The notes beneath the pieces are model-generated. The model was not told the origin of the DNA. It saw only the letters and a list, made by a program, of their open reading frames with translations, and did not search any database. Position numbers and translations under genes: made by a program. Below, in pieces: positions 39,180-44,076 of a DNA stretch of 63,365 bases (position 1 is the first letter of the stretch; the number at the start of each line of letters is the position of its first letter). The DNA is from Haliotis rubra (lineage: Eukaryota), in NCBI RefSeq assembly GCF_003918875.1, contig NW_025766151.1:1-63365 (forward strand). Reading direction: 5' to 3'.

Positions 39180-42100
39180 TCATTTAAATTCATTCAAATT
39201 TTGGGAGGAATTTTTAAAATATCCAAATATTCCTGCCATGTAGGTAAAGATGGACCAAGCTCCCCGTTTCCTGACTGTGACTGCGTCGGTCTCTTTGTTG
39301 TGTGGGGAAGTATTCGAGCCTTCACACGGACTCCGGAAGTCCTGGATCAGCCAATCCATGGCGTCCTTAAGGCCCTGCCTGGAGACAACACTGCAGCCTA
39401 TAATGTTGGCCCCTGGAAGCATACATGTAAGTTCATTCACTTCGAAACGATCTCATTCAAAGCAGATTTTAATTCTCGCTACCGCTAAGCTAAGATCTTG
39501 GGACATTACAGACGACGTCAGAACCGTTCACTAGCTTTGAAAACACATCAATTGACTAACAAGAAGTCGATACAAGTTAACCGAGACATGTAATGATAGG
39601 CTAAAACTGTATGCCAGTTTTACCCACATGTTCTCAAAATTCTCTTCCTTTCAAAATGTTTATCCGAAGTAGTGAGAGATGAAAGTTTTGACCAGACTCA
39701 TGATGAACTGTCCTCTGATTTTTTGTCACTGGAGGCGAGAATTAAGATCTTATTTCAATAAGATTGTCAAGTACCTTCCTGAGGCACAACAATCAGTAAC
39801 TAGGGCATATATAATTGTTGGAAACAAAGTAAAGTCCAAGGCCCTAATTCTTCCTAGTAGAAACATGAACATTTTACAAGAATGTCTTGGTATTGCTTCT
39901 CTAATACGTTATAAACTGTAACAGCTATTCTGTTATAATATACTACCGACAAAAAATAAGGGGACAGATGAAATGATAGTGAATGTGAAATTGCTCTGAA
40001 TGTCCACTAAATCAAATGTGGGCGTAAAGTTCAATATCTGGTGTATCAACCATGTTGGATAACACATTCACGACACCTTGATGGCATACTGTTGATTAAT
40101 TTCCCGGATGGCTGCCCATGGTATTGCCCGCCATTCCTCCTGAAGAGCTGCATCAAGCTGGACCAGGTTGACGCGTGCGGGGTCCCTGGCGTACACCCTT
40201 CGACCGAGAATGTCCCATAGATGGTCAATTGGGGACAGGTCTGGGGACTGAGAGGACCAGTCCAATGTCTGTATGCCCTCTCGTCGGAGGATAAGCTGTG
40301 ACAATTTGGGCCCGATGTGGTCTGGCATTATCATCTTGGAATTCAGAATTCCTGCCGATGATCCTAGCCAGTGGAGTCACGACAGGACGCAAAATTTCGT
40401 CAACGTATCGCTGACCAGTAAAGGATCCATTAACGATGACCAGATCTGATCTCCTGTCATGTGTAACCCCGACCCACACCATGACACTATCACCCCCATA
40501 TCGATCATGATCAATAATTGCCGCTCTGGCATACCGCTCACCGCTACGGCGCCAACAACGTTTTCTGCCATCTGTGAATCTGAGGCAAAACCTTGACTCA
40601 TCTGAGAACATGGTGTAACGCCGATGGCGCAAAGCCCGTCCCTGATGCTGCCTAGCCCATGCCTATCTTTGGCGCCCTGAAAGGCCGCCTTGCTTTCAGA
40701 CGTGCTTGATTGAGCCGGTTTGTAACGGTTGAGTGTGACATTTGTCGCCCAGTGAGTGTACGGAATTCCCTATTGATGGCAGGTGCTGATTTGAACCTAT
40801 TGCGTAGGGCCATTAATGTAATGAGACGATCCTGTCGTGGTGTCGTTGATTTTGGTCTGCCACGCCCAGGTCTCATTGCCCACAGGCGAGAAATTACACT
40901 TTTTGATTTACCCAACATTCGGGCAACTTGACACAATGATGTCACCCCTTCTATCATCCCCACAATTCTCCATTTTGTTTGTTCATTGAGATGCTGCCTC
41001 GGAGGCATTTTTCAGCATGTGTTCAACTCTCTTGCATTAGTGATTGTGAGTTCTCCAATACGTTGACAGAGGTTGACTTGTGTGTGCACGTGCATCACGT
41101 GTTGGTAATGCTTCATGTGGAATTTCATTGTCATTGGATGTTGCGTTTGGGTGCAACGCTACGGTAACGCACCCTTTCACCTCTACGTTTGCTACATTCA
41201 GTTTCTTAGTTCCCTTATTTTTTGTCGATAGTATATATTATGACCGCGTAACCGCAGAGGAACACCATTATTTATGACCTTGAACAATATATTTCTGGAC
41301 TTTAAAACGAATGTAAACAATTGAATCATTAACTGTTGGTATTTTAATCAGATGGTTCCGCACATTAAAGACTGATGAGATAGAGCTTGAATAAACAAGT
41401 AGCAATTTGAGCTTTATCTCAACCTTCATCTCATTTCGACATATATAGGCGATAATTCCTTCCTGAAACTTACGGTGTGTCTTGAGTATGTTCTGGAAGT
41501 CCAGTGCCTCGGCAACCTCTGTTACTGTCATGGCGTCCCGTCGATCCTGTTTGTTGGCAAGGACGAGGAAAGGAATGTCCTTGTGGTCTTCATAATTTGC
41601 GGTAAGCCTCAGCTCCTCCTGAGCCTCCTGTATGCGTGCCCGGTCGTCGCTGTCCACCATGAACAGGACGACATCTGGGTGTGTGTAGTAGAACCGGCGT
41701 CTATACTGGAACTGGGGAAAACAACAGGTCAAAAGTGTGAACCAACGTGGCAATGCTCGACAATCCAGTGATCAATGTCATGAGCATCAATCTATGCAAT
41801 TGGGATGTGTCAACCAAGTCGGCGAGTCTGACCACCTGTTAGGTGACTATTACGCGTGAGTTTAGTTTTACGCCGCCTTTAGCAATATTCCAGCAGTATC
41901 ACGACGGGGGGACATCCGAAATGGGCATAACACATTGTACATTGTAGGGAATCGAACCGTGGTCTTCGGGGTAACGCTTACACCACAAGGCTACCCCACC
42001 GCCCGTCACGCCTGTCACGTAGCAGGGTAACACTGTGGGTGAGGGAATTACTTGGGTGTAGGCCGTTATTAATATTATTTTATCCATGTGTTAACGTGGC

Positions 42101-44076
42101 GTGTGCCCAAGGCGATAAAGACCTAAGACATTACACCACGCCAGTTACAACAAAAATGTGATTTTTGTCAACAAATATGCATACATGCACGCACCCACCA
42201 ACACGCACTGCCCGCTTTCAAAGTTTGCATGTTACGTTATTAACATCGTCAACTGAGATGCATGTCATAGAACTTAGTTTAATCCTTATCGACTTTACAT
42301 GCGCTTGACCATTGGCAATAATTAGTTAGAAAGTCACACGATCCTTGTTGTATAAGAAAACCGATAGATTGAAATAAATCATAAATTGTGAATATGTGAT
42401 ATTATAACATCCAAAGTTTAATTCTGATCTACCAAAATTTGGTATACACCCTTTGGTATAACTGACCACACGACGTCTTTGCTCAAAGTCAATCAGGGTC
42501 ACGTTGATGTTCTTGTAGAGTAGTGTCCATTTGGATTCACCTAAAACATAGTACGAAAACACTATTAGCTGATGCACAAAAAGAAAGTACACGCCTGATT
42601 CTATGGGATTATTATCCCAAAACAACGGCGCTGGTCGTAAATATGCTGAAAAGGTGTAGTGACTGGCTTACAAGCACACTTGCGTTACATCACTTCTAAA
42701 TACCCCTCATGGGCAAGTTACGCAGATATATAAGTTATCATGCTAAATACATTTTATCGTAAGAACCTACTCACAGAGGGTATGTCGTGTTGGCTGAAGG
42801 CCTTCTGACGTTATTCGGTGTAACAGTGACGTTTTTCCTGCATTATCAAGCCCTGGAAAATATAAGGACATATTATTGGATAGGACATGTTCACCTTACC
42901 ATCTAAAAGGCATACATATTTATGCATACTGGCTTCTTTCACGGGGTCTGGTGTCAGGTTTTTGCCTAAATATAAGTGGTTGAAACGAAGACAACAATAA
43001 CTCTTTATAAACGTTTGGTTCTTTTAATAATTTCAGGCTGTGAAGATCAAGGTGAGAATTGGTTTTCACTAACCCAGGCTTGTCATAAGTGGCAACTAAC
43101 GGGATCACCTGTTTAGGCTAAATGATTAGATTGATGCATGGATGCTCATGGTGTCAAATACTGGATTGTCTGGTCCAGCCACAGGAATAGCAGGGATATT
43201 TCTGATTGAAACAGTGGCAACAACAACAATAACAACAACTATCAGTTCGGTGATTTTGTTTTAATATGAAAGGTCATTTCAATAGTTATGAATAATGAGG
43301 ATTTATTGACACTGCCTGGTCAAAAGGACTGGCCTAATAAGGTTAATCGTACATGATTTAATGTCACTGTTTCGAAACGTCACACCCTGCTACCAAAAAG
43401 CAACAGACGTACCATGCTTATGCATGTATACATGGAATGTTGTTTGTTGAAGAATTTTAAGACATACATTTCTAAAAAACAAGGAGCGGTGGGGAAGCCT
43501 AGTGGTTAACGTGTTCGCTCGTCACGCAGAAGACCCGGGTTCGATTCCCCACATGGGTACAATGTGTGAAGCCCATTACTGGTGTCCCCCGTTGTGATAT
43601 TGCTGGAATATTGCTAAAAGCGGCGTAAGTCTAAACTCACTCACTGAGACACAGCAATAATGATTCCACTGAAGCGGCAACTCACTCACTCACTCCAAAA
43701 ACAAAACAAAAAATGATCCTTTGCGCAGGTTTCTTCAACAGCTCATTATAAATGTCAGTTTTAAAAAATGCGTGAAACTGTGAACATGCCAAAAATATAC
43801 CAGCCTACATTTGTCCCCTTGTAAAAAGGAACGCTTATATGGTATCAGTAAATCAGCACATTCTGTAAAATACATAGACTCTAACTACGTGAGTTTTCTG
43901 AGCCATAATTAGGAGGTAAATGTGTGACGTGTTTAGTCCACGTGCTTCTTTTGGTCATGCAGTCTTTTACTATGACTCGATGACTACCTTTAACGTAAAA
44001 GTACTATGTACATACCATGCATGAGAACTTTCACTTCCTTCCTTAGCCATGGCAGCATACTAATATATTGTCCCAT
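39180..44076 (-). CDS. ARF-like small GTPase, copy A: intact ~227-aa ORF with divergent switch regions and a C-terminal extension
   Basis: Exons 44016-44076, 42775-42852, 42467-42540, 41474-41711 and 39180-39412, all GT-AG and in frame. Reads MGQYIS..., [49 protein letters not shown]. Confidence 0.9.
39943..41231 (-). mobile_element. Tc1-family DNA transposon (defective transposase) in intron 4 of ARF-like copy A
   Basis: TIRs ctaccgacaaaaaataagg / ccttattttttgtcgatag and TA TSD. HTH and GRPK motifs, MFSDES, QDDNARPH, SPDLSPIDHLW; frameshifts. Confidence 0.95.

What the first reader, a model, noticed from the sequence alone, without database searches (positions are those of the whole stretch)
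39180..44076. The only fully intact ARF-like copy looks like a myristoylated pseudo-GTPase
Seen: copy A splices into an uninterrupted ~227-aa ORF with conserved exon lengths (61/78/74/238/233 nt). It keeps MGQYIS (Gly2/Ser6 myristoylation consensus), the P-loop GLDNAGKT and G4 NKQD. Switch I PTIGFNVE has become HTLCESKW, and switch II WDVGGQDKIRPLWR has become the Arg-rich IDFEQRRRVFQYRRRF. Inference: it may still bind nucleotide but has lost the DxxG switch. The polybasic surface could bind acidic membranes or nucleic acid. An open frame with divergence concentrated in the effector-binding surfaces argues for neofunctionalisation rather than decay.
Basis: partly seen in the sequence, partly recalled or inferred. 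Interest (0 to 1): 0.78.

Follow-up and report, generated by a model that had tools for sequence, protein, structure and literature searches.

The report
Abalone-specific divergent Arl20 GTPase gene
This blacklip-abalone gene is an intact, fast-evolving offshoot of the little-studied Arl20 branch of ARF switch proteins; its switch motifs are rewritten, yet four abalone species keep its reading frame open under selection, and its expression and biochemistry are untested.

Summary
On the minus strand (44076..39180), five GT-AG exons give an open ARF-family ORF. It is RefSeq's 225-aa Haliotis rubra protein, misnamed "ARL2".

MGQYIS, GLDNAGKT, the switch-I Thr, Asp67 and NKQD are kept. DVGG-R has become DFEQ-R.

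The gene is a Haliotis-specific tandem paralogue of Arl20 (Vargova et al. 2021). Arl20 is an uncharacterised invertebrate ARF clade that already has Arg at the catalytic Gln position and a C-terminal extension of about 45 aa.

Syntenic orthologues exist in H. asinina, H. cracherodii and H. rufescens. All have Gln in place of the DxxG glycine; Gly69 to Glu is rubra-only.

Pairwise dN/dS is 0.38-0.48 (bootstrap upper bounds 0.75 or less). It is about 0.2 in the nucleotide-binding core and 0.55-0.7 in the switch regions and tail. Internal indels are in frame. Neighbouring copies B, C and D carry frameshifts and stops.

So the gene has been selectively retained, and a nucleotide-binding but non-cycling pseudo-GTPase is the best reading.

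No transcript evidence could be obtained. The H. rubra tail carries a -1 frameshift. The North Pacific species have a GC donor at intron 1.

This is a new variant of a known kind, of moderate interest. The scan's first readers also noted this same array (s1-325300, s1-325394).

The parts
44016..44076 (-). Exon 1 (61 nt). ATG at 44076-44074. Encodes MGQYISMLPWLRKEVKVLMH plus the first base of Gly21, i.e. the N-terminal Gly2/Ser6 myristoylation-type motif and strand beta1.
   Evidence: The donor is GT here and in H. asinina, but GC in H. cracherodii and H. rufescens.
42775..42852 (-). Exon 2 (78 nt). Holds the P-loop GLDNAGKT (42830-42852, with its first base in exon 1) and the start of switch I (QPTRHTL). 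The Thr at the ARF1 Thr48 position is kept.
   Evidence: Length and phase match exon 2 of the H. asinina Arl20 genes.
42467..42540 (-). Exon 3 (74 nt). Holds the rest of switch I, the interswitch and switch II. IDFEQRRRV lies at 42467-42493. In ARF1 numbering: W66 to I, D67 kept, V68 to F, G69 to E, G70 to Q, and Arg at position 71.
   Evidence: Four-species alignment.
41474..41711 (-). Exon 4. Holds the Arg-rich YRRRFYY stretch (41685-41705) and G4 NKQD (41544-41555).
   Evidence: PDB ARF1 matches at E 5e-14 for this exon alone.
39180..39412 (-). Exon 5 (233 nt, stop at 39180-39182). Holds a G5-like GCSVV (39384-39398), helix alpha5, a disordered linker, the C-terminal-extension motif AWSIFTYMAGIFGYFK (39213-39260), and a rubra-lineage frameshifted tail NSSQNLNEFK (39183-39212).
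39413..41473 (-). Intron 4. It contains a degenerate Tc1/mariner transposase remnant with broken ORFs, roughly 40046-41008, on the same strand as the gene.
   Evidence: PF01498 HTH_Tnp_Tc3_2, E 2.4e-8.
46669..49609 (-). Copy B. An Arl20-type paralogue (WDVGGR) and the nearest relative in this genome. It is a pseudogene: a 1-nt deletion in exon 3, and +1, +5 and -1 indels with an in-frame TGA in exon 5.
51621..55095 (-). Copy C. An Arl20-type pseudogene with more than 15 indels across exons 1, 2 and 4. Exons 3 and 5 are still open.
61377..63093 (-). Copy D. An Arl20-type pseudogene (WDALER where H. asinina has WDIGGR) with frameshifts and stops. Its 5' exons lie beyond the contig end.

Best explanation
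Copy A is a real protein-coding gene. It is a Haliotis-restricted tandem duplicate of an Arl20-type ARF-family GTPase that diverged quickly after duplication and has since been held under moderate purifying selection.

Shown: the ARF fold and Pfam Arf membership. Also shown are intact G1 (GLDNAGKT), the switch-I Thr, Asp67, G4 (NKQD) and a near-normal G5. Position 71 is Arg, inherited from Arl20. The DxxG glycine is Gln in all four species, and Gly69 is Glu in H. rubra only. The effector and GEF contact residues equivalent to ARF1 F51 and W66 are lost, and switch II is Arg-rich.

Inferred: the protein is N-myristoylated and still binds guanine nucleotide and Mg. It cannot sense the gamma-phosphate through switch II, cannot hydrolyse GTP efficiently, and cannot be handled by Sec7 GEFs or ArfGAPs. 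It would therefore act as a non-cycling, membrane-attached adaptor (a class II-like pseudo-GTPase). Its new interaction surface would be the rewritten switch I, the Arg-rich switch II, and the C-terminal WSxx(T/S)Y helix shared with Arl20.
For: Gene model with canonical splice sites, identical to RefSeq P0001. Pfam Arf E 2.8e-39 across the full domain. AF2 model with pLDDT 78.6 and a confident core; Foldseek top hits are ARF1, ARL1, ARL2 and ARL3 with target-normalised TM up to 0.88.

Orthologues are present in H. cracherodii, H. rufescens and H. asinina. The TIR-LRR neighbour is syntenic and has a matching dS (0.56 against 0.52). The tree puts the A clade at 100/100, on a stem of 0.83, inside a Haliotis Arl20 clade at 96/100.

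Pairwise dN/dS is 0.38-0.48, with CIs that exclude 1 for the five informative pairs. By region: core about 0.2, switch block and tail 0.55-0.7. The rubra-only branch has 21 non-synonymous to 12 synonymous changes, w about 0.5, p 0.049. The asinina branch has w 0.40, p 0.002.

The CDS has no frame-breaking indel against H. asinina except at the tail. On the same contig, copy B has 4 and copy C more than 15.

The parent family is identified from sequences in the supplements of PMC8358228: BflArl20a and AquArl20a carry WDVGGR and a C-terminal extension. The definition of pseudo-GTPase classes comes from PMC12722892.
Against: No transcript evidence. No run on record as RNA holds the exons, and two small putative RNA runs covered only the intronic SINEs. 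No transcript-derived protein from any abalone appeared in the 5.8-billion-protein search. There is no AATAAA or ATTAAA within 880 nt after the stop.

In H. rubra a 1-nt deletion rewrites the last ~10 residues (216-225) and removes the conserved YLPK(L/F) end. H. cracherodii and H. rufescens have GC instead of GT at the intron-1 donor, and their annotated models lack the MGQ N-terminus and strand beta1.

Copy B's exon 4 also shows w 0.26 although B is now broken. A long-branch w below 1 therefore does not prove present-day function. No region shows w above 1. Nucleotide binding, lipidation and membrane binding are pure inference.
Confidence: 0.5

Rival explanations
1. A gene on its way out. 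Constraint acted for most of the time since the species split, but the H. rubra copy is now non-functional or unexpressed, like its three neighbours, and has simply not yet acquired a stop.
For: Three of the four array members are dead in H. rubra. Changes specific to the rubra lineage hit conserved features: Gly69 to Glu and the -1 tail frameshift. The rubra-branch constraint is only borderline (p 0.049). No expression evidence was found and there is no canonical poly(A) signal nearby. Copy B shows that w below 1 can coexist with recent death.
Against: All four splice-site pairs are canonical. The CDS has no frame-disrupting lesion apart from the tail. The tail in the rubra frame is also open with the same stop in a second, closer species, judging from the substitutions listed for runs X10 and X11. 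The core w of about 0.2 persists between rubra and asinina.
Confidence: 0.22
2. Still a working GTP/GDP switch. The unusual G3 (D-x-x-Q-R) supports nucleotide-dependent conformational change through lineage-specific regulators, with the Arg at position 71 perhaps contributing in cis.
For: G1, Thr48, Asp67, G4 and G5 are retained and are the slowest-evolving parts. Arg at position 71 is conserved throughout Arl20 from sponges to molluscs, which suggests it has a role.
Against: The DxxG glycine, whose backbone amide senses the gamma-phosphate in essentially all Ras-superfamily switches (established knowledge), is Gln in all four species. In H. rubra no glycine is left in the motif. The equivalents of W66 and F51, used by Sec7 GEFs and effectors, are gone.
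Confidence: 0.18
3. A nucleotide-free scaffold (class I pseudo-GTPase). The fold is kept but nucleotide is no longer bound.
For: Some atypical ARLs (ARL14, ARL15) purify without nucleotide, according to the review PMC12722892. G5 Ala is Val in H. rubra.
Against: The P-loop and NKQD are perfectly canonical and under the strongest constraint. That would be unexpected if nucleotide binding were dispensable.
Confidence: 0.1

Closest known systems
Arl20 (Vargova et al. 2021, Genome Biol Evol, PMC8358228). A holozoan/invertebrate ARF-family clade derived from Arf1 and lost in vertebrates, with no characterised member.
   Same: Tandem neighbour of, and nested phylogenetically within, the Haliotis Arl20-type genes. 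Same four intron positions and phases, and the same exon 2 and 3 lengths. MGQY N-terminus. Arg at the catalytic-Gln position. A C-terminal extension of about 45 aa ending in a WSxx(T/S)Y...K helix.
   Different: W66, V68, G70 (and G69 in H. rubra) are replaced. Switch I after Thr48 is completely rewritten. Switch II is one residue shorter and Arg-rich. The Pfam Arf score falls from 195-237 bits to 135 bits. The clade sits on a long stem branch of 0.83.
ARF1 (canonical class I ARF)
   Same: Same fold (target-normalised TM up to 0.88, 33-36% identity). Shares Gly2, the P-loop, Thr48, Asp67 and NKQD.
   Different: No DxxGQ. The equivalents of aromatic-triad residues F51 and W66 are lost. It has a C-terminal extension. 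The N-terminal helix is less amphipathic (muH 0.25 against 0.54).
ARL2 (the name given by RefSeq)
   Same: ARF-family fold. The GLDNAGKT form of the P-loop.
   Different: It does not group with ARL2/ARL3, which form their own clade at 99-100% support. The name is a best-hit label and not an orthology call.
Class II pseudo-GTPases such as Rnd proteins and RhoH. They bind GTP but do not hydrolyse it (as summarised in PMC12722892).
   Same: Nucleotide-binding motifs are kept while catalytic and switch residues are substituted. The predicted outcome is a constitutive, non-cycling state.
   Different: Different subfamily (ARF, not Rho). Here the gamma-phosphate-sensing glycine itself is lost, so even a 'GTP-locked active' conformation is doubtful. 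No biochemistry exists.
ARL13B. An atypical ARF-family member that lacks the catalytic Gln and has a long C-terminal extension (from my own knowledge and the PMC8358228 text on Arl13).
   Same: An ARF-family protein with a non-Gln residue at position 71 and a functional C-terminal extension.
   Different: ARL13B keeps DxxG and is an ancient ciliary paralogue with a coiled-coil and proline-rich tail. It is not related by descent to this gene.

Membership tests
ARF family (Pfam PF00025) | Full-length match to the Arf domain profile above the gathering threshold | tested here: met
   E 2.8e-39, 134.8 bits (cut-off 22.3), residues 4-173 on profile positions 4-173 of 174.
ARF family | ARF/ARL three-dimensional fold | tested here: met
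   AF2 pLDDT 78.6. At least 500 Foldseek PDB matches at E 0.001 or better; all 50 listed are ARF-family small GTPases (ARF1/2/6, ARL1/2/3) or fusions containing one, with target-normalised TM up to 0.88.
ARF family | N-terminal Gly2 with a myristoylation-type context (G-{EDRKHPFYW}-x-x-[STAGCN]-{P}; pattern recalled from PROSITE) | tested here: met
   MGQYISM fits the pattern and is identical in all four Haliotis orthologues. Actual lipidation cannot be tested here.
ARF family | G3/switch II WDxGGQ with the gamma-phosphate-sensing Gly and the catalytic Gln | tested here: not met
   The exon-anchored gapless alignment gives I-D-F-E-Q-R, that is Gly70 to Gln, Gln71 to Arg and W66 to Ile.
ARF family | G1 GxxxxGK[ST], switch-I Thr, G4 NKxD | tested here: met
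   GLDNAGKT, the Thr at the Thr48-equivalent position, and NKQD are present in all four species.
Arl20 (PMC8358228) | Three clade-specific intron positions plus one shared with Arf1 | tested here: inconclusive
   The gene has four introns at the same positions and phases as the H. asinina Arl20-type genes P0278 and P0283. The paper's positions are only in a figure that is not readable here.
Arl20 | Phylogenetic placement with Arl20 sequences, apart from Arf1/4/6 and Arl1 | tested here: met
   The A clade nests within the Haliotis Arl20-type clade (96/100), next to Gigantopelta (90/73). A single clade of all Arl20-like rows plus A is not rejected (AU p 0.58). The paper's own Arl20 sequences were not included in the tree; they were only compared by eye.
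Arl20 | WDVGGR (Arg at the Gln71 position) and a C-terminal extension of about 40-50 aa, as seen in BflArl20a/b and AquArl20a | tested here: met
   The Arg and the extension with the WSxx(T/S)Y motif are retained. The W, V and GG of the motif are not.
ARL2 (RefSeq product name) | Orthology to ARL2 | tested here: not met
   ARL2 and ARL3 form their own strongly supported clade without it.
pseudo-GTPase (Stiegler and Boggon classes, via PMC12722892) | Lacks one or more motifs needed for nucleotide binding or hydrolysis | tested here: met
   G3 is non-canonical and the catalytic Gln is absent.
pseudo-GTPase | Demonstrated loss of hydrolysis or of nucleotide cycling | not testable with these tools
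   Requires purified protein.

The most novel reading that the evidence does not exclude
Arl20 as a whole may be a naturally hydrolysis-impaired ARF clade (Arg at position 71 from sponges to molluscs). On that reading the abalone A paralogue is a second evolutionary step: a lipid-anchored, nucleotide-loaded but switch-less adaptor with a newly evolved Arg-rich interface. It has outlived all three conventional Arl20 copies in H. rubra, and may work with the conserved neighbouring TIR-LRR receptor-like gene.
Probability: 0.15. Interest if true: 0.6.

Novelty: new variant of a known kind. Interest (0 to 1): 0.4.

Why it matters
Reviews of the ARF family now argue that many ARLs are not classical switches, but well-defined natural examples are few. 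This gene shows an ARF-family protein that lost the catalytic Gln at the family level and then lost the gamma-phosphate-sensing Gly after a dated tandem duplication. It nevertheless stayed under purifying selection in four species. Its intact sister genes in H. asinina make side-by-side controls. The gene also draws attention to Arl20, a clade found from sponges to chordates but lost in vertebrates; only one paper in the searched library mentions it and no function is known. Practically, the RefSeq name 'ARL2' is misleading and the North Pacific gene models are truncated.

Tried and rejected
(1) Expression. Two searches for sequencing runs found no RNA holder. Laying two small putative RNA runs gave coverage only on the intronic SINEs, plus trace depth (about 1) in one exon-4 bin that cannot be interpreted. 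This is no verdict, not evidence of silence.

(2) Runs X10 and X11 turned out to be genomic DNA of a closer relative. Only the exon-5 substitutions were listed, so its switch II could not be read. Hidden indels cannot be excluded.

(3) My first pairwise alignments suggested a 3-aa insertion in switch I and a 1-aa deletion inside DxxG. I rejected both once H. asinina was added and exon lengths and phases were compared (against 64, 74).

(4) A first tree of 23 rows left the sister group unresolved. It was resolved after adding the intact Haliotis Arl20 genes.

(5) The ARL2 and ARL1 names from RefSeq are not supported by the trees.

(6) Assembly indel errors as the cause of the neighbours' 'pseudogene' state: rejected as the sole cause. 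Copies B and C carry many indels outside homopolymers, including 3- and 5-nt ones. A's own tail change, however, lies in a T/A run and should be rechecked.

(7) The look-up of encoding contigs has no record for P0001.

(8) No AATAAA or ATTAAA was found within 880 nt 3' of the stop.

I ran no complex prediction because no binding claim is made.
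Full report
WHAT IS THERE. The window is a whole 63,365-base contig of the blacklip abalone, Haliotis rubra. The database protein P0001 ('ADP-ribosylation factor-like protein 2 [Haliotis rubra]') is recorded on a contig of exactly that length and matches the gene.

The gene lies on the minus strand. Five exons with AG acceptors and GT donors run 44076-44016, 42852-42775, 42540-42467, 41711-41474 and 39412-39180. RefSeq's 225-aa model differs only at exon 4, where two AGs lie 6 nt apart (ccccagTTCCAG|TAT). 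It uses the downstream one. That is the only acceptor present in the orthologues, so 225 aa is the more likely product.

FAMILY AND FOLD. Pfam Arf (PF00025) matches end to end at E 2.8e-39. Exon 4 alone hits PDB ARF1 chains at E 5e-14. An AlphaFold2 model built on an 84-sequence alignment has pLDDT 78.6. Its G-domain core is confident. Confidence is lower over switch I (about 59) and switch II (about 61). Residues 181-201 form a disordered linker, followed by a terminal helix at 201-224. Foldseek returns ARF1, ARL1, ARL2 and ARL3 structures with target-normalised TM up to 0.88.

WHERE IT COMES FROM. The window holds four tandem minus-strand copies. Copy B is the closest paralogue in the 1.38-Gb genome (55% identity over exon 4). 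The next best hits are ordinary WDVGGQ ARFs.

Copies B, C and D have WDVGGR or a decayed form of it. They share with A the MGQY start and a C-terminal extension ending in WSxx(T/S)Y(M/V)xG. Proteins with the same two hallmarks occur in other molluscs (Gigantopelta, Ylistrum, Potamilus, Pinctada), a rotifer, a hemichordate and two sponges.

The supplementary sequences of Vargova et al. 2021 (PMC8358228) show the same features in BflArl20a/b and AquArl20a. Those authors named the clade Arl20. They describe it as derived from Arf1, defined by three private intron positions, present in unicellular holozoans and invertebrates, and lost in vertebrates. It is the only paper in the searchable library that mentions Arl20.

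In H. asinina the array has four intact genes of 242, 228, 227 and 222 aa. The last is the A orthologue. The H. asinina Arl20 genes have exons of 70 or 64, then 78, 74, 235, and 227 or 236 nt, with the same phases as A.

A maximum-likelihood tree puts the four A orthologues in one clade (100/100) on a long stem (0.83 substitutions per site). That clade sits inside a Haliotis Arl20 clade (96/100), next to the Gigantopelta sequence (90/73). ARL2 and ARL3 form a separate, strongly supported clade. Forcing all Arl20-like rows plus A into one clade is not rejected (AU p 0.58). Copy A is therefore a Haliotis-specific, fast-diverged Arl20 paralogue and not an ARL2.

THE MOTIFS. Exons 2 and 3 have identical lengths and phases in A and in Arl20 genes, so the alignment there is gapless. 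In ARF1 numbering:
- G1 is GLDNAGKT, which is canonical.
- The switch-I Thr48 is kept in all four species. Pro47 is His in H. rubra only.
- The residues after Thr48, IGFNVE in ARF1 and Arl20, are LCESKW, FHNLKW or RYDAKK in the three lineages.
- W66 is Ile or Met, and Asp67 is kept.
- Val68 is Phe or Gly.
- Gly69 is Glu in H. rubra only (a rubra-branch change).
- Gly70 is Gln in all four species.
- Position 71 is Arg, as throughout Arl20.
- The following DKI is RRV, RCL or RRG.
- Net charge of the switch II stretch rises from +1 to between +3 and +4.
- G4 NKQD is intact. G5 is GCS(V/A/I).

Two points need adding. The loss of the catalytic Gln is inherited from the parent family. The loss of the DxxG glycine predates the split of the Australian/Indo-Pacific and North Pacific abalones.

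IS IT MAINTAINED? Orthology is supported by synteny. In H. cracherodii the order is an Arl20 gene, then A, then a TIR-LRR gene. The H. rubra TIR-LRR gene lies at 32289-30268 (82% aa identity), and its dS of 0.56 matches A's 0.52.

Pairwise dN/dS among the four A orthologues is 0.38-0.48. Bootstrap upper bounds are 0.54-0.75 for the five informative pairs.

By region, for rubra-asinina and asinina-cracherodii respectively:
- N-terminus and P-loop: 0.17 and 0.29.
- Switch I to switch II: 0.68 and 0.55.
- Core including G4 and G5: 0.21 and 0.24.
- C-terminal extension: 0.71 and 0.62.

Parsimony on the terminal branches gives w about 0.51 for H. rubra (21 non-synonymous, 12 synonymous, p 0.049) and 0.40 for H. 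asinina (p 0.002).

In a neutral simulation at 0.13 substitutions per site per lineage, the frame stays stop-free in both lineages in 0.3% of runs. The two internal indels between lineages are single codons. Against H. asinina, A's CDS has no frame-breaking indel except at the very end. On the same contig, copy B has four and copy C more than fifteen, many outside homopolymers. A closer relative's genomic contigs (runs X10, X11) show 19 substitutions in exon 5. These keep the frame and the stop (w 0.34), though unlisted indels cannot be excluded.

SIGNS OF EROSION AND GAPS.
- In H. rubra a 1-nt deletion in a T/A run shifts the frame ten codons before the stop. It replaces the conserved (K/R)RYLPK(L/F)x end with NSSQNLNEFK. 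The context is error-prone for a long-read assembly and should be rechecked.
- In H. cracherodii and H. rufescens the intron-1 donor is GC. The annotated models there start either at an out-of-frame ATG within exon 1 or inside intron 1, and they lack MGQYIS and strand beta1. The full ORF is open if the GC donor is used.
- No transcript evidence could be obtained, and no canonical poly(A) signal lies within 880 nt.
- Copy B's exon 4 has w 0.26 although B is broken. Long-branch constraint therefore cannot certify present function.
- No region reaches w above 1, so positive selection is not shown.

MECHANISM. The shown facts are the fold, the motif states and the pattern of constraint. From established GTPase chemistry, the P-loop, NKxD and G5 hold the nucleotide. 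Thr48 and Asp67 hold Mg. The backbone amide of the DxxG glycine senses the gamma-phosphate and drives switch II. Gln71 positions the hydrolytic water.

I infer a protein that still binds guanine nucleotide, because the binding motifs are the most constrained part. It cannot couple the gamma-phosphate to switch II, cannot hydrolyse GTP efficiently, and is not recognisable to Sec7 GEFs, ArfGAPs or classical effectors, because the equivalents of F51 and W66 are replaced. With Gly2/Ser6 conserved, N-myristoylation is likely. The C-terminal helix is hydrophobic and aromatic in H. rubra and strongly amphipathic in H. cracherodii (muH 0.69), and may add membrane or partner binding.

The most likely role is a non-cycling, membrane-associated adaptor, which is pseudo-GTPase class II-like in the scheme summarised in PMC12722892. 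I put this at about 0.5. The rivals are a gene now decaying (0.22), a still-working unconventional switch (0.18) and a nucleotide-free scaffold (0.10).

NOVELTY AND VERDICT. The gene is already annotated, although misnamed, and its parent clade has been named. However, no paper in the searched library describes this paralogue, its altered G3 or the family-wide Arg, and no function is known for any Arl20 protein. It is a new variant of a known kind. Interest is moderate (0.4). The evolutionary case for retention is solid, but the functional claims are inference and expression is unverified. The scan's first readers also noted the same array and its shared tail in this window (s1-325300, s1-325394); I verified both independently. 

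Noticed in passing
window 30268-32289 (-): Intact single-exon gene for a 673-aa LRR plus TIR protein (LRR_8 E 6e-20, TIR E 1e-12). It lies about 6.9 kb downstream of copy A. The H. cracherodii gene is 82% identical and sits in the same position; dN/dS 0.16, dS 0.56.
   Followed up: partly
window 46669-49609, 51621-55095, 61377-63093 (-): Three Arl20-type tandem copies (B, C, D) are pseudogenes in H. rubra. H. asinina has all four array members intact (242, 228, 227 and 222 aa, loci L018/L019). No other copy of the C-terminal-extension exon was found in the H. rubra assembly, so H. rubra may have no conventional Arl20 left.
   Followed up: partly
L014 8813/8814 and L015 10035/10036: In H. cracherodii and H. 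rufescens the intron-1 donor of the A orthologue is GC, not GT. The H. rufescens RefSeq models start at an out-of-frame ATG in exon 1 (MAKEGS, using a new GT donor 16 nt upstream) or inside intron 1. The H. cracherodii model is marked partial.
   Followed up: partly
window 41705-41711 (-): Two tandem acceptors 6 nt apart at exon 4 (ccccagTTCCAG) exist only in H. rubra. They could give 225-aa and 227-aa isoforms that differ by 'FQ' inside switch II.
   Followed up: no
window 41856-42004 and 43483-43645: Two copies of a tRNA-derived SINE lie in introns 3 and 1, in opposite orientation. Summed contig depth on them reaches the millions in the relative's DNA runs and is also very high in the putative RNA runs. 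A degenerate Tc1/mariner element (about 40046-41008) lies in intron 4.
   Followed up: partly
proteins P0334, P0342, P0367, P0215, P0270, P0132, P0155, P0165: Arl20-like proteins from a hemichordate, two sponges, a rotifer and four molluscs all have Arg at the catalytic-Gln position (WDVGGR) and a 40-50-aa C-terminal extension with a hydrophobic terminal helix. The main text of the Arl20 paper holds no mention of glutamine or Q71, so the family-wide Arg appears not to be discussed there.
   Followed up: partly
G000:C2234:1810645-1811124 (L005) and G000:C2298 (L009-L013): Other unusual ARF-like loci occur in the H. rubra genome. One is a single-exon copy with WDVGGK. Another is a cluster on one contig with at least four near-identical exons encoding TVSPCKGVNFTVWDVGGQ.
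   Followed up: no
L018 15153-20140: The H. asinina annotation places a 264-aa gene with no Pfam hit on record over the A orthologue. That product did not appear in either protein search, so the deposited model probably does not follow the five-exon structure found here.
   Followed up: no
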